DNA from: Octopus sinensis
Taxonomy: Eukaryota
Assembly (NCBI RefSeq): GCF_006345805.1
Contig: NC_043015.1
Coordinates: 15,872,001 to 15,936,000, forward strand
Reading direction: 5' to 3'
DNA: 64,000 bases
The translations under genes and the position numbers were made by a program. Below are positions 11,259-64,000 of the stretch, in pieces. Numbering within the stretch: position 1 is the first letter of the stretch; every line of letters starts with the position of its first letter. The notes under the pieces were generated by a model, which was not told where the DNA came from, did no database searches, and saw only the letters and a program-made list of their open reading frames with translations.

Positions 11259-11290
<32 letters not shown>

Positions 11291-12888: not shown

Positions 12889-12934
<46 letters not shown>

Positions 12935-13251: not shown

Positions 13252-13282
<31 letters not shown>

Positions 13283-13484: not shown

Positions 13485-13554
<70 letters not shown>

Positions 13555-14222: not shown

Positions 14223-14264
<42 letters not shown>

Positions 14265-40351: not shown

Positions 40352-41196
40352 CTAAAAGAATTTTTAAAAAGGGATATTAATTAGACCAAATGTTTATTCA
40401 AAACTAGCAGGCTTAACAAATGACTTTATTAATACAGAAAAATCTATTGATTTCTCTTTCTATGAGAAACTTATAAACCATTTGCTGCCAATTGAAAGCT
40501 CCACATTTCAATTGGCAGCAGGTAGAGGTTGTCGGGAAAGAATGTGCGCAGAAAAGAAGCTGATAATTTTTAACATGCTACAATGAAACTGTTTAAAGAA
40601 CCAAGAAATACATAGTAAATGTAATAATTTTATTCTAAATATAATGTCACAACTAAATTCTTAAAAATATCCCAAGCAAAATCTATCAAAGTTGCTACTT
40701 AGATATGAGCAGTCATGTATAAATTGCATAGTAACCCACTTTCTTGTTTTAGCAACAATCAAATTACTCCCCTGATGCAATATTTCAAATATATTTTACG
40801 ACAACACTGCTTTTCTTGAGTGTTAATGATTTTACTTGCTAATCACATTGAACAATAAATAATTCATCTATTATTGTACTCTTCCATTGTTATACCCCTC
40901 TATTGTTATGCCTCTCTATCGTCATACCCATCTGTTGTTATACCCATTGTCTTAATAGATTTGTGACTGCCACTGTTGACTTCTGCCACCATCTTTGAGT
41001 ATCGGTATTGTTGGAGTATATATTCTGGGTGTACTAAGTGAATGCTGCATGTCACACACACAACAGATGGTGAATTCATTAGAGGTGTTTGGCTCTTTCC
41101 ATAATATAATGACGTTTCATAATGGAAAACTCATTTTCTGTTCTGTGTTGATATGTTTTGTCATAGCACTGCTCACTCACAGCTAGTTTTATCATA

Positions 41197-42030
41197 TACT
41201 AGCTTAAGTACCCAGCATTGCTCAGAAGTTTAAAGAATGTTAAAGGAAATAAATACATTTATTCTGATAAAAAATATATTTTCAGAAAAATTCTATCAGA
41301 TGATGTGAGTATAAACAAAGTTTTTAAAACAAATTCTGAAATCAATCACAGTTTAATTTTGTAGAACTTCTAAATATACAATGTTTTCAGTGTGTCCTTT
41401 AATTGGTGTAAAAAGAAAAAAGTTTTGGGACTTCCAACTCATGAACATCCTACAGATAATTGTCCATGAGAGAAGCAAGGAGAAGCAAGGTTAAGTCTAA
41501 CAATATTGAGAGATTGTGCTTGAGAGTTGTTTATGGACATAGCAAAACGTAGTTTAACTGGGAACTGGAACCATTTAAATTCATAGAGGGGGTCAGATAG
41601 GATTAATGGGATCCATGGAATGAAGACATTGTCACCCTTATATTTCCCAAGATTAAGGACTAAACCTCTTGGTTCATTATCACAATTAAAAGGCCTTTAT
41701 CTTTACTTTTAAAAAAAAAAGGTGGGGGTTGTAAATGTATGATGGAGAATTATTCAATTTTGTGTTTGCTTCTATCAGAGTTGCTTACCTTTAAAGCGTA
41801 AAAAACAAAACCAACATATACAACAGATATGTAAAACATATTTCTGTTTTTGAAAAAAAGTTTAAAATTTAGTGACCCCTCTCCCCTTAGAACCTTCCCA
41901 AAACTATGAAAAACCTTTATGCCAAATTTGGTACAGATTGATCCAGCAGTTTGGCCATGCATAGAGAAAACACACACATACACACACTCTCACTCTCACA
42001 CATGCACACACACACAGTGAATTTTATAGA
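41197..42030 (+). mobile_element. Non-autonomous Helitron-like element (Lep1-type termini)
   Basis: 5' tactagc...tacccagcattgctc; 3' atgccaaatttggtacagattgatccagcagtttggcc plus (CA)n, resembling recalled Lep1-type ends. Confidence 0.4.
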
Positions 42031-43780
42031 CACCGTACTAACACAGAGCTGGTACAAAAAGAGGTATACCACTCTAACAATGGATAAATTAATGTAAGTC
42101 ACTCATTATCTATTTTAACTTTTCATGGCATAGAAAATATTAAGAAAATATTGACAGAACAATAGGAGGAAATTGTAGATTCAATTTCAAATCTGAGGTT
42201 GTACCAATATCCAAGTAGAAATAGTCATATCAGATTTAAATATGAAATATCACATATACTCTAGCTAATTTTATTAGGTCCATTCCACAAACAGTTATTG
42301 GAATAACTCATGTCAATATCTCTAACTTATGTCACAGGAAGATTGAACTTTAAAATTTCTATTTCTTTATATCTTTTCTCTCTTACCACTTCACAATCAT
42401 CAAATCCATTTACTTTCCCCTACTCCGCTATCCTCTATCTCACATACTTTCTGTTTGTATCTCTCTTGGTCCTATACTTTAACATTCTTTATATCTCTCT
42501 TGTAAGCTTTGCTGTCTGTCTTTGCCACTCAAATACTATTAACATCTCATTCATCTCTCTGCTTTCCTTTCTCTTTCTCTCTAGAAGTCAAGTAGTAAAA
42601 AGACTTAGAAGACTTGATTAATGAAGTCCAGCTGCTGATTATGCTGGTATGTGCCTGGGCCACAGAAATTAACATATCAGCTGATTTCAGTTTAACCAGG
42701 ATTCAAGTTTTATGGATACAAGTTCAAACTATGGTGACAACTGCGTGTCTTCATTTTTAAAGCAAGTTGCTACAAATAATGTTTCCATTACTATTCCACA
42801 AAAAAATGGTGGGCTTTGACACATGCATACATTTCATTTTGACTAACAAATAAGAATCATTCCAATCAAATTGATTCCATAATAACTACAGAGCTTCTAA
42901 ACATTTCAGTATTGTTAAAAGCCAGAGTCATGGTATCTCTGACTCCCTCAACAGGGATTCACTTTATTTGAAGAAAACAAATGATTTCTAAACCATTTGC
43001 TGAAGAAACCCAAACAAGTGAACATGGCTATTCCTTTTAGAGAAAATCACTAGAGAATGGAAGCAATGTATCAACAGAAATGATGCATTCTTGTACTTTT
43101 TGGTTTTTCTCATCAATGAAGAGATCCAAACATTCAACAAGTTGCTGTCCACTTGAAATATAGCCTACAGATATATACTTCACTACAAACACTAAGTCCA
43201 ACTAGCACAAGATCTACAGCCTCTTTCAAACTGTACTAGTATAAACCCATTGCAAAAACGTGATCTCACATCCCACCATATCATACGTAGAACAAAAAGC
43301 AAAGGCGACAAAAACCAAAGTGCTTCTACTACTGAAGGCTAACCTAACATAAGTTTTGACAATGGAAGATGGTATATTGTATATGTCAGTCAACATGAAC
43401 TTATCTTTGTATGACTTTCCTATAAAGTATGAGGTTCAAATTCATTTGGGTAGTCAACAGAATTTCTCATCACTTATAAATATATATTTCATACTTAGAT
43501 TTCTGGATAGTGATGCCCAGTGGGTTACAACATGGTCAAAAGTTTTTTCTATTTCAAAGAGCCAAGGGATTTTGGGTTCTTTTTGCCTCACCACTAAAAT
43601 GCTGTGAACCATCTAATCCACTTCAACTTGGGCCAAGTATTAGGATAGCATTGCTGAAGATTTCAAGTATCAAGTGTAACAGATGTACCCCAGTATAGAA
43701 AAGGGGGAAATTTACAGTGGAGCAATCATGGGAACTTCTTGAAATTGTTTGGTTTAAATCATCTGTTAATGTTTGTGTGT

Positions 43781-43822
43781 GGGGTGGGGAGTGTGTGGGG
43801 TGGGGAGTGTGTGGGGGTGGGG
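43781..43822 (+). repeat. 3x 16-17-bp G-rich tandem repeat, G-quadruplex-capable
   Basis: (ggggtggggagtgtgt)x3, six runs of four or more G. Confidence 0.7.
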
Positions 43823-44500
43823 AGTGTGTGTGTGTGTGTGCATGTGTAAGTTACTATACTTACATGTAAATACACACATATATCTAGAAAAGTTGGAAAT
43901 GTACTTAGAATAAGGTATATTTACATTTACTTTCACTTAACCAGTTTCATAATATCATGATTTTCAAAAGTAGTGTGAAACAGAGCTAGCTGGAGTTATA
44001 TTTGTGTGAAAAGAACTTAGCTGTCTATCATTCAGTGCCCTATGGCCAAATGATAAGAAAAAAGGTTCACTTTGCAACCACAAGGTCTCAGTTTTGGTTC
44101 CATTTCATGGCATCTTGCACAGATGTCATTCTCTGTTGTCTCTAGTCACCCCATATCGTAAAAGGAAAACCAAGTGCACAAAAAGTGTTTAGAAACCCAT
44201 CAGATGGATTACACCTGTAAATCAAAGGTGCAGCCTTAATACTCAGTCATTCTGCCTAAAAATAAATAGTTCAGTTTAATTAATCAACTGAGTCTACATC
44301 GTTGAGCATACATACATGCATACATACCTGCATACATGCTTGCATACATACATCTGTGTATACACACATGCATACATAGATACATACATGTATGCATACA
44401 CACATACATACACACACACACAAAGAAACACATGCAAACACACACACAAATACATACACACACACATACACAAAGAAACCTTCATACAAACACATACATA

Positions 44501-44940
44501 CAGGGTTTGACCAAAAAGAACTGAACTTTTAAATCAATGCACCAGCCAGTGCAGCATGGTTGAAACTCCAGAGCTATATGTAGGCAGTCTTGTTCTACAG
44601 TCTAATAATAATTACATCATATCACGTTCATTAGTCATCAATCTATATGTGACAGGGTGAATACATGCCTCATTATATGGTGATTTATTGCATATTGAAC
44701 AGTAATGGATTTGAATGATCAGCATTGTGTAGAATTCTGTTTCAAATTGAGAGATAACATTGCAAGAGGCTTACGAGGATGATTATTTGAGAAGTATACA
44801 AAGCCAAGATTGGTGCCAGCATTTCAGATTAGGAAGCACAGCCATCGAAGGCTTCTCTCACATTGCATAAGTAGTTGTTGTGAGTTGTGAAAATCATAGA
44901 TTTGACAGTCAGTGAACTTTTTAAAGAAGTAGACAACTAT
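44501..44940 (+). mobile_element. Decayed mariner 5' fragment
   Basis: TA then cagggtttgaccaaaaagaactgaactttt; MDLNDQHCVEFCFKL...LQEAYEDD..DWCQHFR resembles a mariner HTH. Confidence 0.6.
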
Positions 44941-45186
44941 AATCACTCCCTACTAGAGATAATCAGTGCACAGATTTGTAACCCATTTATTTTGCTTTCA
45001 TCCTTTGGAATGACATAAACCTTGTTAATATTAATTTTCTGTTCACTGTGTCTATGAATATATATATATATTTTTTTTAGCTCAATTCAGTGAGAAAGGT
45101 TCTTAGCAATGGCCTGATATGCTACAAGGAGCAACCAAATTTCTTTCAAATAACTCAGTCTTAACAGAATATGTAGTCTTATACAT

Positions 45187-45227
<41 letters not shown>

Positions 45228-46412
45228 CTGAAAAAAGATCAAGGTGTTTACTGCAAGAGCATTTATATGCATGGTGCTCCCACCTTGGTCATAATGGCTA
45301 AAATAAACTAAAGTATGCCCACTAATGTCAACTTTACTATGAAAAACTAAAGATCTTCATAATATTGATCTGAAGCTAAATAATATATTATATATTCCTA
45401 GAAATAGTACGTCACTAATATACTATATTTTTTAATGACTATATAGAATTTTTTCTCTATTATAAAATGCAATTTTAAATACATGAATTATCATCAAACA
45501 TGAATTATTGCCAAACAAACAACTGTTAATATATATCGCAACAATATTATAAAATTTGTGTAAATTAGACCATTTATTGATAGTCCAAGAGTTAAATAAT
45601 TTTTATAAGGAAATGATAACATAACTTATTTGGTAGAACAGTCGTTCAAGGCAGCAACATCTTTATAATAAGTCTTCGATACACAATGAACAGGGATTGC
45701 TTATATTTTTATATGAACATAGTTTGCTTAGAGTGATGTCTGGGCGAAACGCGAGCTGTTGTTCCTTCTTGTAAACAAGACCATTAAAACAGACTCTCAT
45801 ATGTCAAAGAATGCATTAGTGTCTAATTTCCATATGTGGCAAGCTGACTTAGTGACTAACAGAAAATCTGGAAGATGAAGCTGTTGAAACTCTTCGTTCT
45901 CACACCTACACAAAAACTGATAAAATCTTCTAAGTAGGTTGATTTGAGGCTACAAGTCCTAACCTCCCTCATTGCAAGTTAACAACAGAACTAGCTAGTA
46001 TTTGTTTCAAGAGGTGACTATTGCCACCCAAATCTCATCTGGTTATTACAGGAATTTTTGTTAAAAGCATTAAAATTGATAAGTGCCTTAATTAGAGTAG
46101 ATAGAAAAGAATACCAGCCTCCAGGCAACCATCCAGAGAATGGTGTTTGTGCTAATTGGTGACGACTTTTGTCTGAGACAAAGTCTTAAAAGATATTCAG
46201 TCAGTCTAAATTTGTGAGCTACATTATTCGTTACAATGATCAATTTGTTCTTCATCTATAGATGCTTTATGATAGAATTATAGATTATGTTCTATCTAAA
46301 CCCAGGAAATGTATAATAATGGTTGTACAAAGTTACTATGAGAGATAGAAATACCATTTTGATTCTTGCATGTTCTTCATTTAATGGTGGAAGTATGAGA
46401 CAAAAATCAGTA

Positions 46413-46859
46413 CAGTAATCCTTCAATTATCAAGGATGTTATGTCCCCAAAATCCCCTAAGATAGGTGAAAATCTGTGTTGTATATTTAAAAAAATTTTT
46501 ATAATTTGTTTATATTTATTTCATTATAAATGCAAAACAACACCACACACTTGCCTCCCGAGTTCCATTTTCCATACAGTATGTACCATTTTTTTTGTTT
46601 ACTCATCTATGGTACACATTGTATTTTCTTTTAATATATTTTAGTTAATGTGTTATACAGTTCAGTACTGTACTGTCGTTTTTATTTATTAATTTTTAGG
46701 CATGAAAATGCTTATTTTATCATAGAAATAGTTAAAATCTAAAAAAATATAAATACCTATTGATCACAGAAACCTGCAATATACTGAGGAGGCCATGATG
46801 TAAATTTACATCTGTGATGTACTGATGGCACGATATGTGAACCATGATACTGATTACTG
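46413..46859. mobile_element. Tigger/pogo-type MITE
   Basis: TA|cagtaatc ... gattactg|TA termini. Confidence 0.65.
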
Positions 46860-47693
46860 TACTTCAACATTTGAAAAATAGGCAAAATCAAGAGATTCAG
46901 TAAACTTTGTGATAAAAGGTTCAAACAAGGTTGTTTTGACAAAAGAATGATTTAGACAGGAAGTAGATGAGATGATCAAAACGAAAGGATAATTTTGAGA
47001 ATGAGGCAAGGAATGTACAAATGGAGGACTAAGTAAGAGGTGGTAGGTGTGATGTGCATGCACAAGCACACACATACACAATGATGTGTGTGTGTGTGTG
47101 CATGTATACACACATACATACAAACATACACACACACACATTGTTCTTACATCCATTATAATAGGAATTAAGGCAGCAAAGTGGCTGAATCGTTAGAGCA
47201 TCAGGAAAATAATTGCCATTTAGCACTTGTTCTGGTACTCTAAGTTCAAAATTCTGCTGAAGTCAACTTTGCTTCTCATCCTTCCAGGGCTGGTAAGATA
47301 AAGTAACAGTCAAGTACTGGATTGATGAAATTATCTCTCCCCATCCCCTTAAAATAGCTGGCCTTGTTTGTGCCTCTATCAAATACCATAATTATTAGCA
47401 ACATTAGAGAAATGTCAAGAGGTCATTGCTTAACACCTTTTCTTTTTTATCTTTTCTTCCTTTTACTCTGGATTGTGACCATACTGGGGCACCACTCTGT
47501 AAGATTTTAGTCAAACAAATCAACCATTTTATGTTTTCGTTTTTTTTAAAGCCTCATACTTATTCTTTTGGTCAACTAAATTAATTTCTCATTGCCAACA
47601 ACTGACAAGTCAACTTAACCGTGGTAGCATGTCTTACATCATATCATACATTTTATGCAACTACTGATGTTGAAAAATTTAGCATGTCATATA

Positions 47694-48255
47694 TGAGGTC
47701 TGATTGAAAAGTGTCAGGACTGTTGCTATGGTAACAGAGTTAAGGTACAAAGAGTGAAACCACTAGACACAGATTGACTTTGAACTCAGTTGTATAACCA
47801 AGTTATAACATTCTTACTGACTTCTGTTATTTATAGCTTGTACTTATAGTGTGTTATTTAAAGTGTGTAGAGTGTGATCATCACAAGAAGAAAATTGGGC
47901 TTCAGCCATACAAGATCTTCTTGATTGTGTCAAGGGAGATGAAAACTTTTTGAGAACAGTCAGGACAGGTGATGAATCATGGGCCTTTGACTATGACCCT
48001 GAAACCAAGGCATAAGTAAAAGCCAGCATGAAAGGAACAAGATTTCAAGATGCTGAGGAAATTCAAGAGAATACAACAAGGCAACTGCTTTCTATCCTGA
48101 AAAATAGAGTTCCAGGAATGCTTCCATCAGTGGAAACAATGCTGAATAGAGTGTGTAACTTTGGAAGGGGACTACTTCAAATGAAATTAAATGTCGAATC
48201 GGTATATGTTGTTCTTTTTATAGCACCAGTCCTGATACTTTTTGATCAGACCTAT
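47694..48255 (+). mobile_element. Internally deleted mariner (~560 bp)
   Basis: TIRs tgaggtctgattgaaaagtgtcaggactg / cagtcctgatactttttgatcagacct; TGDESWAFDYDPETK and KGTRFQDAEEIQ motifs. Confidence 0.85.
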
Positions 48256-48899
48256 GACAACTTACAAGGGAAACATGAGCTATGTATATGACATTTTATG
48301 ACATTAGAGATACCCCCCCCCATTTCATCCCCCAACCCCAACCTTTTAAAAATGTGATATTAAAAGAAAGTTATGCATTATTACAGTCACTAAATGAAAC
48401 TGAACTTTCAAAAAATTAAGGTCAGCGTCAGCTTACTTGATAAAATTTTAATTTATTAAAATTACTCCCACATCTAGGAGAAAGAATCAGATTAACAATC
48501 AGATTATCAAAAAGGCAGGGGAGACAACCCTGAAACTTAATTATAGAAATCATTCAGTCATACATAATTTTAAAAAAATTTGGGCGGGGGTGGGGGTGGG
48601 AGGTATATATGTTACAGACTTCAACATAAAATGTTATGGAAACTTTTTTTGCAGCCTGTTCCATGAGAAGAAATACGAAATCAGTGTTCCATGATAACAA
48701 ACACTATAGTCATTGGTTTGGCTATTATTGAACTGGAGTGAAACTTTTTTGACACTAATGACACTTGTATTGTAATATGAAAGATATATTCAATTTTCAG
48801 TTGATTTCTGCTAGTAGGAGAGATGAAAGAAATAAAAGTACAGTCAATCATTTTCATATCCCTTCATCATTCTATTTACTAGCTCGTCATTCTAATTTT

Positions 48900-49157
48900 T
48901 TTTTATTTTATGGGCCCTTTTCAAGCCTAGCCAGGCTCATGGGCCCGGTTTCCCGGTTTCTGTGGCGTATGTGTCCCGCCCACCCCAGCTGGACGGTACG
49001 CCAGTCCATTGCAGCGTTATCCAAGAAACAGGAAGAAAGAGTGAGAGCTTTAGGTGTTTTCGCTCAATAAACACACATAACGCCCAGTCTGGGAATCGAA
49101 ACCGCGATCCTCCGACCGCGAGTTCGCTGCCCTAACCACTGGACCATTGCGCCTCCA
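48900..49157 (-). mobile_element. Young tRNA-derived SINE, family C
   Basis: A box TGGTCCAGTGG, B box GGTTTCGATTCC, A-rich tail; CpGs intact; homologous to 50721-50950. Confidence 0.85.
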
Positions 49158-49599
49158 CACACGTCATTTTAATTACTAGCTCATTATTTATAAAACGAGG
49201 AATTACGATGAATGAATGAATAGATCAAATGTTTGAAATTTGTCAGAAACGTCATGAATTCGAATTTCTTCCATTGCTCTCTCAAACATCTCATAGAGAT
49301 CTCCATTGGAATTGAAAGCAGGTAATACGGCGGAGGTATTTGTGGTTATTCTTGGATCACTCTAAGTCGGCTCTGGTCGACCAGATCTATGATCAAAGCT
49401 AGCCACCCGACTTTTTATTTGGACAGAGCCCTCCAGATTACATTATCTAATGTATTCGTTTCAGGCAGATGAGATGATGTAATCTGAGGGAAATTTGGCT
49501 CTGTTCTTAGCAGAACAAGCGATAGCACAAATATTCCATCAGTATGATTGTCGGTGCCGAGATTAAGGTTTTGATACGAGAACAGAATAGAATTGTAGT

Positions 49600-50000
49600 G
49601 ATCCTATAACGGTGCGCGCGCACCGTCCATTTTCTATTTCGCGCGTGTGAGTGTTGGTGCCTTCACCAAGGCACAGAAAGGAAGGGCCCTCTCGCGCATG
49701 CGCGAACCACCGGAAGCACGACCCTTTTGCCTACGTGGTAGTTAGCCAAGGCAAGGGGGTCGTAGAACGTTTGACCGCTAGCAGCAGCAGCCAACGACTT
49801 GGGACAGCAGCGACCGAAGGCGACCGAAGGCGACGGACGTATATTTTCTCGCTGTCCAGCTTTGATAGCAGTCGGCCGAAGACTTTTAACCTGAATTGTT
49901 GCAGACATCATCATCTTCCTCCGGACGCCATTTTTGACCCGTTCTGTTTTTAGCGGCTGAACATTGTAAATATTACAATCGATTAACTTTCAGCCTTGCG
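49600..50000. promoter_or_regulatory. CpG-island promoter candidate, possibly bidirectional
   Basis: Local GC/CpG peak in unique sequence; TCGCGCATGCGCGA (NRF1-like, 49692-49705), CCGGAAG (ETS-like, 49710-49716), CGCCATTTT (YY1-like, 49926-49934), TATAA at 49605. Confidence 0.65.
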
Positions 50001-50720
50001 CGCCCAGAACCAAAGGGATACCAGATAACCACTTATTGTTACTGTTACCACATTAGAGAATAAAGTAGTATATATATTTTACGTCTGCGTCTTGTTGTTT
50101 CTGACTGGTAGAATTCTGGATTATTAAAGCAACGGCTAGTGATTGCCTCTTGTACCCCGAAAGTACAGGAGTAGATTCACACACAAGAACCGTTACAGAA
50201 TAAACCAGAAACGAGAAACCATTATTCACATTTGTTGCTGAATCAGAATTATTCCGCGTTGCTGTGTAATTCAGTGATAGCATCTTCTGCAAGAGCATTT
50301 TTTCTTATCAGAAGGTAATTGCTAAGGTCACTTACATAAATTATCTATGTGCTGTTATATATAAACAATATCTTGATTCATTGCCAAACAAGTTTATAGA
50401 GTACATTTTACTGTTAAGATTCGTTACGTGAGTCTCATAATGAAATATTCGTAAGTGTTGATGTAACGCTTATTTATTTATCTTACTTTTCAATAACAGA
50501 AAATGAAAAACTGGCCAGTTGGCAAAAATACCAGAGTTCTAGATTAAAAACAATACAGTATTTAACCTTTCTGGGATCGATAAATTAAGCATTAATAAAT
50601 ACATTTGTGTTGATTAAATTAACGATACTTTCTCAGTTAGAAACTATTTGCATTATTAATCTAAACAAGAGAAATACGCTTAAGAAGCTCGAATTAAATC
50701 CTTCCCTATTTCCAAATAGG

Positions 50721-50950
50721 GGAGGCGCAATGGCCCAGTGGTTAGGGCAGCGACTCGCGGTCGGAGGATCGCGGTTTCGATTCCCAGGCCGTGCGTTGAG
50801 TGTGTTTATTGAGTGAAAACACCTAAAGTTCCACGAGGCTCCGGCGTCCCGTCCAGCTGGGAGGGGGGGGGGCACATACGCCACAGAAACCGGGAAACCA
50901 GGCCCATAAGCCTGGCTTGGCTTGAAAAGGGCGCATAAATAAATAAATAA
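50721..50950 (+). mobile_element. Young tRNA-derived SINE, family C (inverted relative to 48900-49157)
   Basis: ggaggcgcaaTGGCCCAGTGGttagggcagcg...GGTTTCGATTCC, (TAAA)n tail. Confidence 0.85.
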
Positions 50951-53900
50951 TAATTTCCAAACAGTATATCTTTCAGATTACTAACTAGAAGCATTACAAG
51001 CTGGTGGTTTTTTCCCTGCTCTAATTCCTTAAATCAAATTGAACACTTCTGCTAGACTTGTTTTAAACGTGGTAAGGCTACTGGAAATAGTTGAACAGAA
51101 AGTCCACACAAGTTCACTTTACGACCATCCTTTGTAATGAAATTTAAACCACTCTCGATTTGATTAGAATTATAAGTGTCAAGGAACTTCTCAATTATTA
51201 GTCGATTCAGCGCAACTTGAATCGAGCCACCAAGATTATATTTGGACCGAGAAGAGAAGAGAGAGAGAGAGAGCAAAGGAATGAGGGGGAGGAAAGAGAA
51301 AAGGAAATTAAAAAGAAGACCATAAAAAGGAAGAATGCTGAAAAGAAAAACAGGAGGCGTAGATGTATGAGTGCAGTACGATTAAATGGATGAGATGGAT
51401 AGAATATCAAGACAAAGAGATAAGTGGATGAGAGAGAAAGAAGGAAAAAGTATAAAAATAATGGTTAAAATAAATTAAAAAAAAGGAGAAAGTGACGTCC
51501 TTTGTTTAAGACATTAAAACAGTAGATAAGGAGTTAGTTCCTGTAAGTAGAACTTGACCCTGGTTCATAGGGGTTTATAAACACCAGAAACAACCACTTT
51601 CATTACAGCTAATTGTTAGCAGTAAAGTAGGGGAATGTACTACACAATAAACCGGGAAAAAGCTGTCTGGCACTGTAACAACTCTGTTGTAATTCAATGT
51701 TATATTGTTCAAAACCATGTGTGTATAAACCATTGAATGCAGGCCTTGGGAACAGGTATATAGGTCGAAGGCTTGGTTATTCTACCACGTGTGTATACCT
51801 TTCCAGTACTTTTTTTTATGCATGCAAGGCAGGAAATAATTTTCCCATATTTTATGAATAAACTTATATAAATATTCGCAGTTTTCGGGCTAAGCATATA
51901 TCATACTGTTTCATCTGATATCGAAATGCATCAAAATATTGCTGTGTCTCGTATTACAATCACCCTGATATTTTGAATACATATGGTCGATGGATACAAT
52001 GGCTTGGATGTATGAGAGAGAGAGGGAGAGAGTGACATTCATGGTTTACTCTGGAACATCAACAAGTTAAATTAAACTAACAGCTTCAACCGGAAACTGA
52101 AAACTGATCATAAACCCAGCTCACCAGTGAATTTGGGTTTACAATCTCTTACATTCTGAAAGGAGGGCAATAGTCCCTAGTCTGTATCTCAAATAACTCC
52201 ACAACTTATTTATAATTATGTTAAACAAACACTATACAGGAATTTTAAGATAAACAAAACAACTAAAGTTGATGTGAAAAATTACGCTTTGTGTGTGTGT
52301 GTGTGTGTGTGCGAGAGAGAGAGTAGTAGTAGTAGTTTTAATTTTTGTCGTTATGATGACAAGAAAAGAGCAACAAGAAAGATTAACCAATTCTAATATC
52401 ATCATCTTTATTTACTATATCACACGATACTTCATACTAGACAATAGACTTTCACCTTAATAGATTTTCCATACGCAAATATTTTGTTGCATCGACGTTA
52501 CTAATATTTTTTGCATGTAACGAGTACAAAAACTACTGCTGAAGCATCTAATCCCATGTAATTTTTACAAATGATTCGAGAACTATCTAACCAGATACGC
52601 ATTACGCTTGTCAATTAATCTTCCATAGACATTTTCCGATGGATGTCACTAAAGTGAACCGTTCGAAAATTCAACCTTTATATCATGTCACTAACATCAT
52701 ATTATAAGCCTTACATTCAAACATCCAGTCTGTCTAGTGATGAAACGAGGAGATGCCGACCTTAACTGTTAGTTGAGCAATTGTAGAAATAACAAATGTT
52801 ACAGAAGCTTGGAGTGATAAGCTTATATCTTTTCAGTGGCTGAGGTGACAAGGACTGAAGTTACTTGTTAGGCAATCTATAGTGATGTCAAATAATACAA
52901 TAAGATTGTGAAGCCTTGCTCATTTTCAGGCTTCCGTTGCAATTCAATCAGCATGAAGCGCAGTAGTTCAAAACGAACCTTAATTTTTGACCAGATAAAG
53001 CTAACATATAATCTGTGCCTTCGTTAAATAAGTTAAGTAACAAGCCTAAGTGTCAGTGTTGATGTTTGTCAAGTTTCAGAGTTTGTATCTGGCCAATGGT
53101 ATTGCGTTGTGCTCCGAAAGCTGCTTAGAAGCAAAATATATTTGGTGACAGAGAAACAAAAGCAAAAAAGAAGTATAGGAAATAGATTTCCTTTGATTTC
53201 GACGATGAACATTCCAACTGAACCATCTGAAATGCCTGTTCATTTAATTAGTGTAACAGGCTGAGTATTCCACAAACACATTTATCCTAAATTTTAGTTC
53301 TCAAATAAGATCAGCGCGGTTCATTGTGATAAGACTGAACTTTTGAATTACAAATATAATGTATTTGACAGTTTCCGCCAGCTTAATTTCATTCAAAGGT
53401 TTGAATCAAAGACACTTGCTCAAGATGTCATGCAGTGAGATCGAATCTGAAACCTATGATTGCAAAGTGAACTTCTAAGCCATTCGGCCATGCTACGCAT
53501 ATAATGATTTAGCAGGAAATTCTCATTGGTTAGAAGGGACAGCGATACGAGATATAATTCTTCTCTGACATGAGATCGCATCGTTTAGCCCAAATCAGCA
53601 CTGACTGAGAAAATGTATAATAAATAGCACTCCAGCCGCGACTGTCGTGTCTTTATCTTGACCTATGGCCACATTTTTCAATGTGTTCGCGGTACGGTTT
53701 TTACACGAGGGAGATTTGATTGCTTGTAGTAGCTCTCTGCCTAGATTTAAACCACCTTGCTCAGATTCCCTGTTTAGACTCACAACCGAATTTTATTGCC
53801 ATAAAACATGACAAGCTCCTTGAGCCGAATTATATTTCCATAGATGGCATGAACACCTACGTAAATGTTTACTGTATCGGCTGACACGTAACAATTAGTG

Positions 53901-54637: not shown

Positions 54638-55890
54638 TTGGGTTGGCAACTAAGTTCCCATCGCTTTTTAAAATTTCGGAATTTATTGCGTTTTTAAATT
54701 TTGGAATCTATTTTTTTCGAGAAATCTATTTTTGAATCATTTTGGAATTTTTTTTTTTTTCCAGTTAATTTTAATTAATTTTTGTTTATTTTCGGATCAT
54801 TAAAATAGAATGCCAAGTTAAGAAAAACGAGCATTTTCGACACCTCCTTCTTTTTGCTTTTAATCAAGGTTCTAAGGCCGCAAAAGCTGCTCGCGACATT
54901 TGTGCTGTGTATGGAGAGGGTGCCATAGCTAAAAGAACCGCTCGTGATTGGTATCCCAAGTTCAAAAGTGGAAATTTTGACCTCAAAGACGCACCTCGTT
55001 CTGGCCGCCCAGTTGAGTTCGATGAAAAGCGATTAAACCAACTTTTGCACGAAAATTCTCGTCAAACGACAAAGGAACTGGTAGAGAAAATGGAATGCTC
55101 CCACACTGCTATAGAGAAGCATCTTCACTCAATGGGAAAGGTTCAGAAGTATGAAGCATGGGTTCCACATGTTTTAAGTGACAACAAAAATCAACAAACC
55201 ACAATATCCACTGGTTTGCTTGCTTGTCACCATTCAACTCATGGACACAAGCAACGATTTCTTTACCGAATCGTTACTGGTGTCAAAAAATGGTGCCTGT
55301 ACATCAATATGAAGCAGCGTAAGGAATGGCTTAGCCCCAGTAAACAAGCGACACCGTCTGTGAAACAAGATCTTCATCCGCATAAAACGATGTTGTGTGT
55401 ATGGTGGGACTGGAAAGGGATTATTCATTACGAATTGCTTGAACGGAACCAAACGGTCAACAGATGGAATGACTCAAAAAATAAGACCTAAACGGCAGCA
55501 TGGAAGTCTTCTGCTGCACGACAATGCCCGCCCTCATATCGCCAATATGACTAAGGAAGCCATTCAAACGCATGGCCGGGAAGAGCTGCCACACCCGCCG
55601 TACTCTCCTGATTTGGCACCAACAGATTTCCACCTCGTCGATCTCTTTCGAATGCTATGCCCAGAGTTTCGTTCAATACTGATGCAGAATTGAGAACTTG
55701 GTTGGCTCAATTTTTCGAGTCGAAATCGGATGATTTCTACCAACGAGGTATTGAAAATCTTGTTGAACGTTGGAAAGAAGTTGTAAACAACAAGAGTGAA
55801 TAATTATTGATTAATTAGTTGTTATTTTTTATTAAACCTTTAAAAAAAATTTTAATTTTAAAAACGGCGGGAACTTAGTTGCCAACCCAA
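54638..55890 (+). mobile_element. Near-full-length mariner transposon (1253 bp), inactive
   Basis: TA-flanked TIRs TTGGGTTGGCAACTAAGTTCCC; WVPHVL, HDNARPH, YSPDLAPTDFHL; start ATG reads ATA, first catalytic D reads V (TGVKKW), internal deletion and frameshifts. Confidence 0.93.
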
Positions 55891-55952
55891 TAGAAAGTGA
55901 TCGTGGCCGAACTGGTCCAACTAAACTTATGTAAGGGATTGATCACTATAAA

Positions 55953-56168
55953 CAGTGGTTGTCAACCATTTTCTTTCTATGGACCCCCCCCCCTCTGATT
56001 CTTATTTTACTCTGGTGGACCCTGTAGCCATTCAATGCTATTATATTTTTACAATTAAATATTATAAGGAATTGCATAAAAAAGAATAACCAATTTACTG
56101 CACACAAATTTTAACAAAACCTTATTTGGACCCTCAAGGGCCATATAAGACTCCAGTTGAGAACCACT
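55953..56168. mobile_element. hAT-type MITE with 8-bp target-site duplication
   Basis: cagtggttgtcaacc ... gttgagaaccact termini flanked by ACTATAAA on both sides (last TIR base lost). Confidence 0.7.
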
Positions 56169-59100
56169 ACTATAAATCGGTCAGCTTTTTCAAACTTCCA
56201 GAGTTCTTGTTTTGTTCTAGATCAATCCTCGGTAGGTCTATTAAAGGCATTCTGTCCGTGGTCACTCCTTTTCATTTCAGACGAGTCTACATTTTTCCAA
56301 TGTTTCTTAGTATTTTTAAACGATAGAGTAAGATTGACAGACATTTGGCTACTATTTCTAGCAAGAGGGGCGACCACGTAGAAGTTCCCTCGGCTTATTT
56401 ACTGAGTCTTTGAAAGTTTTGAAGGACAGTTTGCCAACTAAACAATTATTTTCTCTTTTAATATCAGTTGAAAGGAGCACATTTAAATGAGAGAAATAGT
56501 GCACTGTCAGAAATATAATTATAGTTTCACTTAGGAAGTTTGTTTAATTAAAAGAAAATTTTAAAGAATTTTTTTTTTTTTGGCTAGTTCCACTCCACCA
56601 TACACTTATAACTGACGACGCCATTTGCCAAAATAGATGTGTGACCAGCAGTCATAGTCAAAAATGAGAATAAGTGTTAAAAGATATACAGACTATGCAT
56701 ACTAAAGTATATATTTTAATAACTCTAAGACAAATAATTCGCTAACGTCAAGCATTGATTGTGATACATCTGCCAAAATATTCATTTTCAGGAGAGCATT
56801 TGGAACAAATCAACATATTACCTAAAATTGCCTTAAACTGAAATACTACTGACTATGCAACTTTGTGCCACAGCGAACTACTAATGATACATATATATGC
56901 ATCACTTTTTTACTTTTCTGTCTGTCTGCCTCTCTCTCTCTCTCTCTCTCTCCCACACACACACAAGGATTAGTTAAATTGACCCAACCCTTTTTATCTC
57001 TTCAATTAATTCCTAGAAGATACAAAGTACCCACAGAAAACACGTACTCCTAAATCCCTTTCCTCAGTTCTTCCCACCACAACACACACCTACACAATAT
57101 TTGCTTTATGATAACTTCCGTTACAATTTCCCTTCGTTAATTAGTCAAGGTTAAAATTTCCTCTCTGAATAAAATCTAGTAACTTTTCAAAACTTCCACT
57201 TATTATATGCAGCTCTACTTCTAACACCACTAGCAAGTTGTTAGTTGGATACTTGCTTTGTTGGTCGCTTGGCTAGCTGCTCTAATCAGCACTATGCTTC
57301 TCATCTAACATAGAAATTAGATACTGCATAATATTACAATTGAGTAAATAACGTCGAGAAAGATGCCAGCGACATAAGCATACTAAAACCATTTGTTGAA
57401 ATGAATAGTTATTAAACTCAACCCATTTTAAGTTGCCTGAGTTGACAGCCATGATTTCTGAATCAAAACAAAAACAAAACAAACCACACAACAACAATCA
57501 TAAAACTATCCTCTGCATAACAGGGTGTGTGATGGAAAGTGTAGGTTCCATAATATAGTCGGTGTTGTTCTTAATGTCAAACTTAAAGGTTGCCCAATGA
57601 TAGCGAAAGGAACTCCCAGAAAATGGTTCATAACACAAAATAACAAGAACATATCCAAGATATAATTAGGTAAAAGAGATAGAAAGAAAGAGAATATGCT
57701 TAGAGTATAAATAATGATTTTTTCCCTTCATAACAGAGATGCAGACATACAAACAGCCTCACACATAAATATACACATGTTTACCATACAATGTACACGG
57801 AAAGACTCGTTGAATTGTCTACACTAGAACTTCTCAAACATTTTTTTTTTTTAATTATCACTCCTTTTCTCTTAGAAACACTTTTTCAGCGCCCTCTTGC
57901 TACGATTCAAATATTGATTTCAAATTTCGGTACAAGGTCAGCAATTTTGTGGAAGGGGTAAGTTTCAAATTCCGCCGAGGTCGACTTCGCCTTTCATCCT
58001 TTCGGGGTCGATAAATTAAGTACCAGTTGTGTACTGAGGTCGATCTAATCGACTAGCCCCCTCCCCAAAAATTTCGGGCCTTGTGTCTAGAGTAGAAAAG
58101 TATGCATACGCTATATATCAGGACAGAGTAATTTAGTTCTGAGTACGAGTTTGGCACAGGTGACTAACTTCGGTTGAGTTAAGTGTTCTCGTATTCTTTG
58201 TGTATCATTTATATGCCTCCACCCCATAACTACTCGTTGAAATTTAGTATCTATCTCCTCGCAAGTATTTATCTTCTACCCTTGTACGGCGTTACATATA
58301 TATGTTTATACATGTAAATAGATAATGAGATTTTAAAAATTACATTCATAACTAGAGCCAACAACGTACAAGTCCGGACATTACGGATGCAGTGACCATT
58401 TTCGTTTTATGTACGGAAATACACACATTCTGACAATGCCTTTTAAATTTTACTTCAGTTTTTCGTTCATTTATATGCATGGATGGCATGCCTGTTGCAC
58501 TGCCCCACCACTATTCAACGGTGCACTCTCAGATTTACAGTGATACACATATTTCGAAATTCCACTTTAGCATTATTACAAATTGGTGCCCACCCAGAAT
58601 ATTGTGAAGCACTCCCAGGCACAAAAGTCTGGCAATGAACTTGATACACTTTCTTTATTTACTTATTCACGTTATCGTTGATGTCATTTATATCATTGTC
58701 TTAGTTGTAACTTGTTAACAAGCGGTTTATCATAATATAATATTAACTTTTTAAATAGGAGTAGCCGGCAAAAATTTAATGGGTTGAATGAAAGATTTTG
58801 GGGGGTATTTTGATCTGTATCAGTTGCCTACCTTTACATACGGTTGTCTTAGCCTTTCGTCTACTCTGAGGACATTAAAATAAGTACCAGGAAATGAATG
58901 TACTGAGATGAATATAATCGATTAGAAGCCTTGAAGATGGCCCCCGCAAAACCACAGTTGAATAACTAGTTTTATGGATCCAGTATTTTATTCACCGCCT
59001 GATGAGAGTAACAGTTGTCAAAAAAGAACGTTCCATAACAATTGCAACGAAGATCATGTGCATTTCCTTTTATATTATGCATCAGAAGTTGGCTTCTTTT

Positions 59101-60327
59101 TTTTTTTTTTTTGCTTATCTTTTTTTACTGTTTTGACTGAGTACCGTTATAAATTGAACGTTTGTTGAAAATTTTCGCGAAAAATATCTTGCTGAGACTA
59201 ATTATGGAATACGTATGAGCCTTACCACCTAGAGCGCATGTGTATATGAGAATGAGTAGCCACAATACACTTATTTTTTCCTATTTGCGAGGAAATAAGT
59301 TGAGCACGCATCACTAGACGTTTTCTCAATATAACCATAATAGGATGAGTTTGGGAGACTTGTGAACTTGGGGTATAATTTGTGATTCAGTGAGAGTCCT
59401 CTTCAGTGTATACAACAATGGGATGGAAAATAGTAAAACTTTCGTTTCAATGTATAGCTAACGTATACAAATTATCTGCGCGCAGTTTGGCTGTATTATA
59501 GCAGATAAGGCTTAGCTAATATTGAATGGTAAAACAATATTTTCGTCATAATGTTTATCGTCTGTTTGAAAATGGAAATCGAATGTTCAAACCTTTGGAA
59601 AAAATCATAAATTGTAAGGTATCTATTTATCTTCTCTCCCCACGCCCTCTATCTATCTGTATATCTATCTCCGCACTCAATGTTGGTACACAAATGCATA
59701 CACCTTCCACATGTGCCACTCTCAAACGAGCATGTATTGATAGCATGTATCCTGCTTTCGCTAATTGTTTTAGGCATCTATTCTAGACACCTTCTCGGCC
59801 TATTAATCCGATGGAATATCGACGATGGCAGCTGGGGGGAGAGCGGGCTGAACCAGCTCAAGACTAGTTATAAGCTGAGTAGACAGGATCAGGATTAAAT
59901 GAAACACATTACTGAAGGGCACAGTGCGACACTCGATCTAGTAATCGATCTCACAGTCTTATGACTGGAAGCCTGAACACCCTAACCACTAAGCCACAAA
60001 TAGATAGAATGCACACGACGAAATTTTGTTCTATATAGCAGTATCCGATAGCAGCCCTGTTTTTCAAATTTAAACCGCTGAGTTGGAAGAACACAATAAG
60101 AGAAGTAAAATTAAAGATTTTACTATTCTTCCCTCTCCCTTATTCTGACTAAAACAAATTCTCAACACCCTCCAAGGCCAAAAAAACAGTCTGTCGTCTG
60201 AGAGATGCTGATCCATTGTGATGAAGAATTAGATATTCAATAGTTTGACCTTCAACTCACAATTAAATAGGACGAACTCCAGTGCAAATTGAAAGCCAAT
60301 GAGTTGGGGAGATAGTTAAATAAATAA

Positions 60328-60328
<1 letters not shown>

Positions 60329-60384
<56 letters not shown>

Positions 60385-60385
60385 G
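60329..60385. repeat. (GATA)n microsatellite, one of dozens of (CA)n/(TA)n/(TTA)n/(GTAT)n tracts in the window
   Basis: Direct reading. Confidence 0.95.
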
Positions 60386-61597
60386 ACAAATAAACTCACA
60401 CACTGTATGTGTGTGTAATATTGAGAGATGGAGCAACAGAAGGTGAATTTTTTCGGTCGAATTTTTTCACTTCAGACCTCTCCTACCACACTCTCGTTGT
60501 GGTATTTTAGTGTAGTTGTGTGTGATATAAGTGTATGTGCCTGCTTGGGTGGGTATGAGGGGAGAGATGTTTGTTTATTTCGTACCACAACAATCACACA
60601 TTGACGGAATCAGATAACTTAACAAATAACTAAATATAGGAATGGTTAAAGGTGATAATTACTACGACGACATTAAATGATAACACCACTATGTGCTTTG
60701 ATCTAAGCAGAAACTGCAACTCAGTTAATGCCTTTGATGTATTCGTATGTATCTCAGGATAAGACAACAGTTATTAAAGAACTCTCTGGAATCTTAGTAC
60801 TGATCATGTGACCGTTGAGATTTCTTGAAATATCAAATCAGAAGAGACAGTGGTGGGAGAAGAAGACTGAAACCCAATGTTGTGAAGGCAGACTTTTAAT
60901 GTATTCAAGATGAAGTATTTTAAGACGCTGAAATATATATCAAGACCATGCATATACAGGTCGGAATTAATGAAAAATCAGGTAGGTAAGGTGGGCTGAA
61001 TAGCATTATTATTATAAACAACTTCATAGCAAAAAAAGAAGAGAGAGAGAGAGTACCAAATCAAGAGAAGTGAAGACACCAAACATGCAAGCAAAACAAG
61101 CTGGGTGGGCTTTGGTTCTGGTTGGAAACATTAACAACAAAAAACTTCGCTACAATAGAAAATATTCAATGTTGATAAGGATAAGACTAATTTATTTATC
61201 TAAGAAGATAGGAGAATGACTGTAACAGTCATGCTGAAGAGAAATACATGGTTTCTCCCCTCAAATTCGACATTATCAGTCACAACCTCGTCAACGGCAA
61301 TTTCAGATTTACCAGCATCAGACTAAATTTCGTTATCGTCAGTCTCAGTTACGTTATCAATTTTAATTTCGTTATCGTCAACTTCAATGTCGTCACTGTT
61401 AGATAGAGCGAATTATTTTTTTTCTTTTACAAGCAGACATTGACTTCAGTGATTACATTTAGAATTGTAAAAGAATGTGAACATTAAAAATTGACAAAGG
61501 ATCACAAGCTTTGTATAGTGATAAAAATTGTCACACAACCGTAAAATGCACATACATACGTACATATAGTACATTAGATACAAAACTATAGCCTATA

Positions 61598-61978
61598 TTC
61601 TTTTACTTGTTTCAGTCAGGTGACTGTGGCCATGCTGGAGCACCGCCTTTAGTCGAGCAAATCGACCCCAGGACTTATTCTTTGTAAGCCTAGTACTTAT
61701 TCTATCGGCTTCTTTTGCCGAACCGCTAAGTTACGGGGACGTAAACACACCAGCATCGGTTGTCAAGCGATGTTTTGTGGGGGGGGGCAAACACAGATAC
61801 ACATACATATATACGACGGGCTTCTTTCAGTTTCCGTCTACCAAATCCACTCACAAGACTTTGGTCGGCCCAAGGCTATAGTAGAAGATACTTGCCCAAG
61901 GTGCCACGCAGTGGGACTGAACCTGGAACCATGTGGTTCGTAAGCAAGCTACTTACCACACAGCTACTCCTACGCCTA
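61598..61978 (-). mobile_element. Full-length tRNA-derived SINE, family B; partial copies ~2340-2490, 15520-15640, 16240-16500, 24140-24420, 36345-36490, 53400-53490, 62270-62330
   Basis: Head ggcgtaggagtagctgtgtggtaag...ggttcagtcc; body gcaagt.tcttctactatagcc; tail ccagcatggccacagtc...tgactgaaacaagtaaaag shared among copies. Confidence 0.8.
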
Positions 61979-62399
61979 TACTATAAATAAAACATCGCAA
62001 AGACAAAAGTTAATAACATCAATTTAACTTTTTATTCTTTATTCCAATTTCTTATTGCTTTTAACATATTCTTTAAAAAAACAACAAAATCATTTTTGGT
62101 AATCAATGATACAGCCCAGTGTCAATTAATATAATAATATTAATAGATACAGGATTGGCTTTGATTTTGCTGGATCTTTTAAGAATATGTAAAGAGAAGT
62201 AAGATATGGGAATGATGAATAAAAGGTTAAACTGGTGCTATCTATTTTGTCTTCGCCATATATATATTCTTCTATTTGCTTCAGTCCTTTGACTGCGGCC
62301 ATGCTGGAGCACCGCCTTTAGTCGAACAGGATCTTTGTGGTTTTCGTCACTGTTTGCAATTTTATTCCAATTGTTTTAAAATTTGGTATATGGATTAAT

Positions 62400-62706
62400 T
62401 TTTGTATACTAATTATGAAAATTTCGTTTTTGGATTTGGTTTGCAAGATTCTTTATGTGAGTCCCCGTGTTGAAGCATATTCTGTTGTGTCTGGGGAGAG
62501 TCATTCTCTTTTGGTGCCTTATAATTTAACACACACACCGGTAAAATTTCCACTTATTTCGGGCAGATTCAACGACTATTGAAAAGGTTGCAAGACGCAA
62601 CGAAAATTTTAGAAAAGTAAAAATAGAAAAAAAGTGGAAATTTTACCGGTGAGTGTGTTAAATTATAAGGCACAAAAAAGAAAATGACTCTCCCCAGACA
62701 CAACAG
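62400..62706. repeat. Fold-back element (74-bp inverted arms) with a terminus related to the Penelope family 2 ends
   Basis: 62482-62555 and 62632-62706 are inverted copies; upstream tttgcaagattctt.atgtga...gtgttgaa matches 10835-10870. Confidence 0.65.
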
Positions 62707-62752
62707 TATATTATATATATATATATATATATCTGTACATATATATTTATAC

Positions 62753-62791
<39 letters not shown>

Positions 62792-62792
62792 C

Positions 62793-62831
<39 letters not shown>

Positions 62832-62832
62832 C

Positions 62833-62873
<41 letters not shown>

Positions 62874-62939
62874 CATATACATATATATATATATATATAT
62901 ATATTTATACATATACATATATATATTATATATATATAT

Positions 62940-62971
<32 letters not shown>

Positions 62972-63151
62972 GTACATATATATTTATACATATACATATA
63001 TATATGTACATATATATTTATACATATACATATATATATATATGTACATATATATTTATACATATACATATAATATATATATGTACATATATATTATACA
63101 TATACATATATAATATATATATGTACATATATATTTATACATATACATATA

Positions 63152-63194
<43 letters not shown>

Positions 63195-63220
63195 TATATA
63201 TTTATACATATACATATATA

Positions 63221-63252
<32 letters not shown>

Positions 63253-63349
63253 TTATACATATATATATATACATATATATATATACATATATATATATGT
63301 ACATAATATTTATACATATACTATATATATATATATATTATACATATAC

Positions 63350-63381
<32 letters not shown>

Positions 63382-63478
63382 GTACATATATATTTATGCA
63401 TATATATATATATAATATTTATACATATATATATATATATGTACATATATATTTATACATATACATATATATACTTTT

Positions 63479-63535
<57 letters not shown>
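62706..63535. repeat. ~830-bp compound (TA)n/(TACATA) microsatellite-minisatellite array
   Basis: Almost only A/T dinucleotide runs with a recurring gtacatatatatttatacatatacat unit. Confidence 0.95.
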
Positions 63536-63536
<1 letters not shown>

Positions 63537-63725
63537 CTCATTTTTGTTTATCGCTCGAAATTGACCGTTATTTGAAAGGACCAATGAAACAAGTCCATTT
63601 TTAAAGATGTAGCGTTTATACTAGTCTTGATAGAATTGACATATCGGTTTTATTCGAGCAAAAACTGTCCGACGAACGGGAACGTGAAACAGTTGTTGAA
63701 TTTTCTGCTGCTTTTGAATAAAGTG

Positions 63726-63785
<60 letters not shown>

Positions 63786-64000
63786 TTATATTATATTATA
63801 GTGTATTATATTATACTATATTATATTCTATTTGTTAAATTTACAGAGAAACAAAAGATGAAGACAGGTGTATCAACAACAACTGGGTGTATATACTTAT
63901 ACACATATAGTATTTATTCAGTCCTACGGTGACGAAATTTAAGCTGACGATAACGAAATTGATGACAACGTAATCGCGACTGACTATAACAAAATTGCGT

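What the first reader, a model, noticed from the sequence alone, without database searches (positions are those of the whole stretch)
40352..64000. The collagen N-terminus is missing from 23.6 kb upstream, yet a strong promoter sits 9.3 kb from the first exon found
A collagen IV chain needs a signal peptide and a Cys-containing 7S start (typically ending near GCNGT) before GHDGKPG, roughly 100+ residues. I found no Gly-X-Y exon on either strand between 40352 and 64000. Options: (a) the true 5' exons lie beyond the window and the island is an internal promoter making a 7S-less, signal-less or non-coding transcript; (b) the island drives a different gene overlapping the collagen locus; (c) the gene is 5'-rearranged; (d) assembly misjoin. 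Option (a) or (c) would be unusual, because 7S is needed for network assembly and the signal peptide for secretion.
Basis: partly seen in the sequence, partly recalled or inferred. Interest (0 to 1): 0.7.

Follow-up and report, generated by a model that had tools for sequence, protein, structure and literature searches.

The report
Collagen intron holding another gene's promoter
The collagen IV gene's missing start most likely lies beyond the edge of the window, across a large transposon-filled intron, and the CpG-rich promoter inside that intron appears to drive a separate transcript on the opposite strand, which is an ordinary arrangement.

Summary
The collagen gene runs on the minus strand. 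Its 5'-most exon in the window is 40271-40351 (GHDGKPG...), which sits behind a good acceptor with an in-frame stop just upstream. It aligns to the point directly after the last cysteine of the 7S domain. No Gly-X-Y exon, no Cys-rich 7S start and no signal-peptide exon lies between 40352 and 64000 on either strand.

The island at 49.5-49.95 kb is also real. Its GC is 51-56% and its CpG o/e about 1.2, against 0.40 for the window. It holds the window's only NRF1 palindrome and its only CCGGAAG site.

The unusual readings are not supported. The 23.6 kb looks like intron: a Helitron remnant, a mariner remnant, two SINEs with their own target-site duplications, and microsatellites. The plus strand from 49700 to 50346 is the longest ATG-free stretch in the window (0 ATG where about 8 are expected; the minus strand has 10). 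It ends about 30 nt after the only good plus-strand donor, at 50314.

The collagen 7S and signal exons most likely lie past 64000. No coding exon of the plus-strand transcript was found. Low interest.

The parts
40271..40351 (-). 5'-most collagen IV exon present in the window ([27 protein letters not shown]). It is an internal exon that follows the 7S 'GC.G..' position.
   Evidence: The acceptor is ttttag|GGT with an in-frame TAG, and the donor is aag|gtaggt.
39734..39808 (-). Next collagen exon, [25 protein letters not shown]. It carries the first interruption after 7S, the counterpart of GDPGGVIGIVPLKGDRG in fish COL4A1 (P0067) and GEPGDSHGYVPGGVGERG in P0082.
40352..64000 (-). Stretch free of collagen exons. 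It is read as part of a 5' intron of at least 23.6 kb whose upstream exons (signal peptide and 7S) lie outside the window.
   Evidence: Searches found no GXY or 7S exons. Searches found transposon remnants.
49500..49950 (.). CpG island, with GC 51-56% and CpG o/e about 1.2. It is the strongest CpG cluster in the window and is unique within it.
49693..49716 (.). NRF1-type palindrome CGCGCATGCGCG (49693) followed by the ETS core CCGGAAG (49710). Each occurs only once in the 64 kb window.
49611..49624 (.). Perfect 14-nt palindrome GGTGCGCGCGCACC inside the island.
49700..50346 (+). Longest ATG-free stretch on the plus strand in the whole window (reported as 649 nt). It is read as the 5'UTR first exon of a plus-strand transcript. 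The start site is inferred to lie somewhere in 49720-49870.
   Evidence: 0 ATG against 7.9 expected, with none of 5000 Markov simulations reaching 0. The minus strand has 10 ATG in the same stretch.
50312..50320 (+). Candidate 5' splice site aag|GTAATT, with the last exon base at 50314. It is the only donor scoring at least 7 bits inside the ATG-free stretch.
48894..49156 (-). tRNA-derived SINE copy, flanked by a 25-nt target-site duplication (48867-48891 and 49164-49188).
50721..50955 (+). Second copy of the same SINE in the opposite orientation, flanked by a 12-nt target-site duplication (50708-50719 and 50953-50964).
54775..55800 (+). Frame-shifted mariner (Mos1-type) transposase remnant.
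   Evidence: HTH_48 at 1e-18 and Transposase_1 at 2e-15. Coordinates.
41442..41696 (-). Remnant of the C-terminal helicase region of a Helitron.
   Evidence: Helraiser 7lcc_A residues 1385-1454, E = 1.2e-8, and PIF1 helicases at E about 7e-3.

Best explanation
The window cuts the collagen IV gene inside a large 5' intron. The exons for the signal peptide and the 7S domain (about 120-140 residues) most likely lie more than 23.6 kb upstream of exon 40271-40351, beyond coordinate 64000. The usual head-to-head partner collagen IV gene, if this species keeps that arrangement, would lie there too. The exon-free stretch is ordinary intron filled with transposon remnants. The CpG island at 49.5-49.95 kb is a separate promoter of the housekeeping type (NRF1 and ETS motifs). 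It fires on the plus strand, antisense to the collagen gene. It would give a first exon of roughly 450-600 nt that carries no ATG and is spliced at 50314. The rest of that transcript was not recognised in the window. Shown: absence of 7S exons, CpG island statistics, motif uniqueness, strand-specific ATG depletion, transposon content. Inferred: that the island is transcriptionally active, the position of the start site, use of the 50314 donor, and the location of the collagen 5' exons.
For: There are no GXY, Cys-rich or 7S-like exons at 40352 or beyond on either strand. Exon 40271-40351 has an intact acceptor and cannot extend upstream, so it must be spliced to something further 5'. The interval contains a Helitron remnant, a mariner remnant, two independent SINE insertions with target-site duplications and microsatellites. 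The island has CpG o/e 1.2 against 0.40 for the window and holds the only NRF1 palindrome and the only CCGGAAG in 64 kb. The plus strand 49700-50346 is the longest ATG-free stretch in the window, with P(0) below 2e-4 locally, while the minus strand has 10 ATG there. That stretch ends about 30 nt after the only good plus-strand donor. No signal-peptide-like ATG ORF lies on the minus strand next to the island. The ORFs across the island have no meaningful Pfam match. Rfam and ARAGORN found no RNA gene. From established knowledge: collagen IV genes normally start at a short bidirectional promoter shared with a second collagen IV gene (PMC3459649, PMC12141075), and no plus-strand collagen exon exists in this window. 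From my own knowledge: large 5' introns are usual in vertebrate collagen IV genes.
Against: No coding exon of the proposed plus-strand gene was found in the 13.7 kb to its right by Pfam or PDB searches of ORF pieces of at least 40 aa. Two AATAAA hexamers lie inside the proposed first exon (about 50058 and 50199, seen in the sequence), so the transcript could instead be short and unspliced. The 50314 donor is only moderate, at 7.3 bits. An intron of at least 23.6 kb would be more than twice the largest one visible in the window, which is 9.7 kb. No expression data, no flanking sequence and no orthologous locus could be obtained. The source organism's proteins are not in the searchable collections.
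Confidence: 0.55

Rival explanations
1. The island is not an active promoter. It would be a CpG-rich relic, an enhancer or an unmethylated spacer, and the plus-strand ATG-free stretch would be chance. The collagen 5' exons would still lie beyond the window.
For: No downstream coding exon was found. AATAAA hexamers lie inside the proposed exon. After correcting for about 200 window-sized tests, the ATG-free run alone is only borderline (derived).
Against: The ATG-free run coincides exactly with the island and with a donor, so little multiple-testing correction is needed. The only NRF1 and ETS core motifs of the window sit together about 20-30 nt upstream of it. A CpG o/e of 1.2 in a genome at 0.40 indicates long-term protection from methylation, as at promoters.
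Confidence: 0.2
2. The island is an internal or alternative promoter of the collagen gene, or the gene is rearranged at its 5' end. Either would give a minus-strand transcript lacking the signal peptide and 7S.
For: CpG-island promoters are often bidirectional. A weak minus-strand donor cag|GTTAAA at about 49892 follows an ATG-started ORF in phase 0. No 7S exons lie between the island and exon 40351.
Against: The minus strand has 10 ATG across the island region, which is not like a 5'UTR. There is no signal-peptide-like first exon. The product would be a non-secreted collagen fragment without the 7S domain needed for network assembly (PMC3459649). The intact acceptor at 40351 and the exact register with the 7S boundary indicate a conventional upstream exon.
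Confidence: 0.07
3. The island is the canonical bidirectional promoter of a collagen IV gene pair. The plus-strand transcript would be the partner gene with a non-coding exon 1 and a first intron longer than 13.7 kb.
For: Head-to-head COL4A1|2 pairs are conserved across most Metazoa (PMC12141075). From my own memory, human COL4A2 has a non-coding first exon. The plus-strand first exon here is ATG-free.
Against: The minus-strand gene would need its signal and 7S exons between 40352 and 49600, and none are there. There is no plus-strand Gly-X-Y exon up to 64000. NRF1 and ETS motifs are typical of housekeeping promoters, not what I recall of the COL4A1/A2 promoter.
Confidence: 0.05
4. An assembly misjoin somewhere between 40.4 and 64 kb has separated the collagen gene from its true 5' end.
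For: The exon-free stretch is unusually long relative to the other introns in the window.
Against: The window has no N runs and no abrupt composition break. Repeats are ordinary dispersed elements with intact target-site duplications.
Confidence: 0.05

Closest known systems
Large 5' introns of collagen IV genes (vertebrate COL4A1-A6)
   Same: The small exons for the signal peptide and 7S are separated from the main collagenous exons by the largest introns of the gene. Exon 40271-40351 begins exactly after the conserved GC.G.. position that ends the Cys-containing 7S region.
   Different: The upstream exons are not in the window, so the intron size and the exon structure of the 7S region in this organism are unknown. 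That 5' introns are large in vertebrates is stated from my own knowledge and was not tested here.
COL4A1|COL4A2 head-to-head bidirectional promoter (PMC3459649; PMC12141075)
   Same: A CpG-rich region lies upstream of a collagen IV gene, with a divergent plus-strand transcript.
   Different: No collagen exons flank the island on either side, and no signal-peptide exon is present. The motif content is NRF1 plus ETS. It fails the defining feature of two collagen IV genes diverging from it.
Intronic or antisense CpG-island promoters of nested genes
   Same: An unmethylated CpG island lies inside a long intron of a host gene, on the opposite strand, with housekeeping-type motifs and an ATG-depleted first exon ending at a 5' splice site.
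   Different: The nested gene's coding sequence was not identified, and transcription was not observed.

Membership tests
Collagen type IV alpha chain gene | Long Gly-X-Y domain with many short non-collagenous interruptions | tested here: met
   About 800 residues of Gly-X-Y in at least 27 minus-strand runs, with interruptions such as [50 protein letters not shown] and [11 protein letters not shown]. The best invertebrate match is a gastropod collagen alpha-1(IV) at 46% identity.
Collagen type IV alpha chain gene | N-terminal signal peptide and Cys-containing 7S domain | tested here: not met
   Not present anywhere in 40352-64000. This applies to the window only, because the exons may lie beyond it.
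Collagen type IV alpha chain gene | C-terminal NC1 (C4, PF01413) domain | not testable with these tools
   The 3' end of the gene lies to the left of coordinate 1, and the window ends within the collagenous domain.
COL4A1|A2-type bidirectional promoter | Two collagen IV genes diverging from a shared short promoter | tested here: not met
   No plus-strand Gly-X-Y exon in 49.9-64 kb and no minus-strand first or 7S exons in 40.35-49.6 kb.
CpG-island promoter | At least 200 nt with GC of at least 50% and CpG o/e of at least 0.6, against a CpG-depleted background | tested here: met
   49501-49900: GC 51-56% and o/e 1.17-1.27. The window has o/e 0.40.
CpG-island promoter | Clustered core transcription-factor motifs | tested here: met
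   The single NRF1 palindrome and the single CCGGAAG of the window lie 16 nt apart at 49693-49716. These are motif matches only; binding was not tested.
CpG-island promoter | Transcription initiation observed | not testable with these tools
   No expression data are available.
5'UTR first exon of a protein-coding gene (plus strand) | Depletion of upstream ATG on the sense strand only | tested here: met
   0 ATG in 49700-50346 against 7.9 expected. It is the longest such stretch in the window, and the antisense strand has 10.
5'UTR first exon of a protein-coding gene (plus strand) | Ends at a 5' splice site and is followed by coding exons | tested here: inconclusive
   A donor aag|GTAATT is present at 50314, but no coding exon was recognised downstream.

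The most novel reading that the evidence does not exclude
The collagen IV locus has lost or been separated from its 7S and signal exons, and the CpG island acts as a bidirectional promoter. Its minus-strand output would splice into exon 40271-40351, giving a collagen IV transcript without 7S or a signal peptide, or a non-coding one.
Probability: 0.05. Interest if true: 0.6.

Novelty: already known. Interest (0 to 1): 0.13.

Why it matters
It matters little beyond correct annotation. It warns that a collagen IV gene model from this scaffold needs sequence beyond 64000 for its first exons. It also shows that the CpG island in the intron should be annotated as the start of a separate antisense transcript, not as a collagen promoter. 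If the low-probability reading were true, a 7S-less collagen IV isoform would be of real interest for basement-membrane assembly.

Tried and rejected
- **Finding the organism's own collagen IV protein.** The aim was to read its N-terminus. No near-identical sequence appeared.
- **Length limit in the word-index search.** In one search the hit lengths piled up just under about 1.75 times the query length, which looked like a length cut-off. That was the reason for padding the query.
- **Exact-sequence look-up of the mariner ORF.** The aim was to locate the source assembly. It found nothing.
- **Rfam and ARAGORN.** Rfam on 40-64 kb gave only sub-threshold microRNA hits on microsatellites. ARAGORN found no tRNA. 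An RNA gene at the island was therefore rejected.
- **Composite transposon with long terminal inverted repeats.** The two inverted SINEs flanking the island suggested this. It was rejected because each SINE has its own target-site duplication and A-rich tail.
- **ORFs across the island.** The 100-aa plus-strand ORF and the 83-aa minus-strand ORF have no meaningful Pfam match; the only hit was 12 bits, below its cut-off. The plus-strand ORF has no ATG.
- **Second mariner-like remnant.** One suspected by eye at 47878-48180 was not confirmed by Pfam or PDB.
- **Translated DNA references.** Exons lying in shorter open stretches would have been missed.
Full report
**The collagen gene and its first exon in the window.**
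The window is AT-rich (GC 33.9%) and strongly CpG-depleted (o/e 0.40). A six-frame scan for Gly-X-Y runs found 27 runs on the minus strand between 163 and 40351, plus one on the plus strand at 23340-23384 that lies inside the minus-strand run 23312-23410. The gene therefore reads from right to left, and "upstream" means higher coordinates.

The 5'-most exon is 40271-40351. It encodes [27 protein letters not shown]. It is preceded by a pyrimidine-rich acceptor, ttcttttag|GGT, whose TAG is an in-frame stop, and it ends at aag|gtaggt. It cannot extend upstream, so it must be an internal exon.

The next exon (39734-39808) encodes [17 protein letters not shown]... This is the counterpart of the first interruption after the 7S domain, seen as GDPGGVIGIVPLKGDRG in a fish COL4A1 (P0067) and GEPGDSHGYVPGGVGERG in P0082. 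It also matches [20 protein letters not shown] in human COL4A1 as I recall it. Counting triplets back from that interruption places the start of exon 40271-40351 just after the conserved GC.G.. position. P0067 has 123 residues before this point.

**Are the missing exons in 40352-64000?**
No.
- No Gly-X-Y run of 4 or more triplets lies there on either strand.
- At 3 or more triplets there are four hits ([36 protein letters not shown]). None contains more than one proline and none has the Pro-rich look of the real exons; one sits in the mariner remnant.
- A pattern for the Cys-rich 7S start matched only two plus-strand chance sites.
Nothing scored better than E about 1 at 40352 or beyond. The same queries hit the known exons at E of 1e-15 to 1e-19.
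- The minus strand next to the island has no ATG-started ORF with a signal-peptide-like hydrophobic core.

**What the 23.6 kb contains.**
It looks like intron.
- A Helitron helicase remnant at 41442-41696 (-) matches the Helraiser transposase at E = 1.2e-8.
- A frame-shifted Mos1-type mariner lies at about 54775-55800 (+), with HTH_48 at 1e-18 and Transposase_1 at 2e-15.
- Two copies of a tRNA-derived SINE lie at 48894-49156 (-) and 50721-50955 (+). BLAST gives 79% identity over 267 nt; outside a 31-nt indel they are close to identical. Each has its own target-site duplication of 25 nt and 12 nt.
- Other dispersed repeats are shared with the collagen introns.
- TG and TA microsatellites produce only sub-threshold microRNA matches in Rfam.

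Pfam on ORF pieces of at least 40 aa from the plus strand (50250-62400) and the minus strand (40352-50300) found only the mariner. A PDB sequence search with the plus-strand pieces found nothing. Exon-to-exon gaps visible inside the window are 0.1-3.7 kb, with one of 9.7 kb. An intron of at least 23.6 kb would be the largest here, but it would sit where collagen IV genes usually have their largest introns (my own knowledge of the vertebrate genes).

**The island.**
In 300-nt windows, 49501-49900 has GC 51-56% and CpG o/e 1.17-1.27, with up to 29 CpG per window. That is the highest in the window. The island core has no other copy in the window.

It contains the only NRF1-type palindrome (CGCGCATGCGCG at 49693) and the only CCGGAAG (49710) in 64 kb. 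It also holds a perfect 14-nt palindrome (49611) and a YY1-like AAAATGGCG on the minus strand (49926). These are motif matches, not evidence of binding. Together with the methylation-protected CpG content, they make a promoter of the housekeeping type the most reasonable reading.

**Which strand does the island serve?**
The plus strand from 49700 to 50346 is the longest ATG-free stretch on that strand in the whole window. A first-order Markov model of the same region expects 7.9 ATG, and none of 5000 simulations gave zero. The minus strand has 10 ATG in the same interval. ATG depletion on one strand is what selection against upstream start codons produces in a 5'UTR.

The stretch begins right after the NRF1 site. 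It ends about 30 nt after aag|GTAATT at 50314, the only donor of at least 7 bits inside it. The first ATG after it opens a 5-codon ORF. This fits a non-coding first exon of a plus-strand transcript, antisense to the collagen gene, spliced at 50314.

The weak points are these:
- Two AATAAA hexamers lie inside the proposed exon.
- The donor is only moderate.
- No downstream coding exon was recognised.

The transcript could be short or non-coding, or its coding exons could lie beyond the window or in open stretches shorter than 40 codons.

**Is the island the collagen promoter?**
Collagen IV genes normally sit head-to-head with a second collagen IV gene on a short bidirectional promoter. The spacer is 127 nt in human (PMC3459649). 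The pair is conserved across Metazoa with some protostome exceptions (PMC12141075). For the island to be that promoter, the signal and 7S exons of the minus-strand gene would have to lie between 40352 and 49600. They do not. No plus-strand collagen exon follows the island either. An internal promoter giving a 7S-less, signal-less product has no positive support and would make a non-secreted fragment. Rearrangement or misjoin cannot be excluded from sequence alone, but nothing points to either: the window has no Ns, no composition break, and intact target-site duplications around the local repeats.

**Limits.**
The source organism could not be identified.
- Its proteins are absent from the searchable collections.
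- The best invertebrate match to the collagen is a gastropod collagen IV at 46% identity, which weakly suggests a mollusc.
- No flanking sequence, orthologous locus or expression data could be obtained.

**Verdict.**
Interest is low.

Noticed in passing
48894-49156 (-) and 50721-50955 (+): These are the only two copies of a tRNA-derived SINE family in the 64 kb window. They bracket the CpG island in inverted orientation, heads inward, 1.56 kb apart. Each has its own target-site duplication. Both keep high CpG (o/e about 0.9-1.0). This may reflect insertion into, or protection by, open unmethylated chromatin around the island.
   Followed up: partly
41442-41696 (-): Remnant of a Helitron transposase helicase C-terminus. 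It matches Helraiser 7lcc_A residues 1385-1454 at E = 1.2e-8. Pfam did not detect it.
   Followed up: yes
54775-55800 (+): Mos1-type mariner transposase remnant, spread over three reading frames by frameshifts.
   Followed up: yes
47878-48180 (+): Two adjacent open stretches that looked by eye like the middle and C-terminal parts of a mariner or DDE transposase (TGDESWAFDYDPETK..., GTRFQDAEEIQENT...). Neither Pfam nor PDB sequence search confirmed this.
   Followed up: yes
4800-14526 (-): A 9.7-kb gap without any Gly-X-Y run. It is the largest exon-free stretch inside the collagenous part of the gene in this window. It was not examined for small exons or nested features.
   Followed up: no
51240-51480 (+): A purine-rich (GA/AAG) tract with GC skew and AT skew both above 0.5, just downstream of the right-hand SINE.
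   Followed up: no
62600-64000: A very AT-rich (GC 17-24%) block of TA/TATAC-type microsatellites at the right edge of the window. It gives long spurious 'YIYI' ORFs and sub-threshold mir-297/466 Rfam matches. Similar TG-rich tracts lie at 44280-44495 and 46854-47156.
   Followed up: partly
31521, 26393, 33151 (-) exon ends: With simple phase-0 boundaries, several collagen exons end at poor donors (aag|GTTAAA, caa|GTTAAT, gca|GTAACA). Better donors lie a few bases away (for example gag|GTAAAC at about 26400). The real boundaries are probably split-codon junctions, and the exon coordinates used here are approximate.
   Followed up: no
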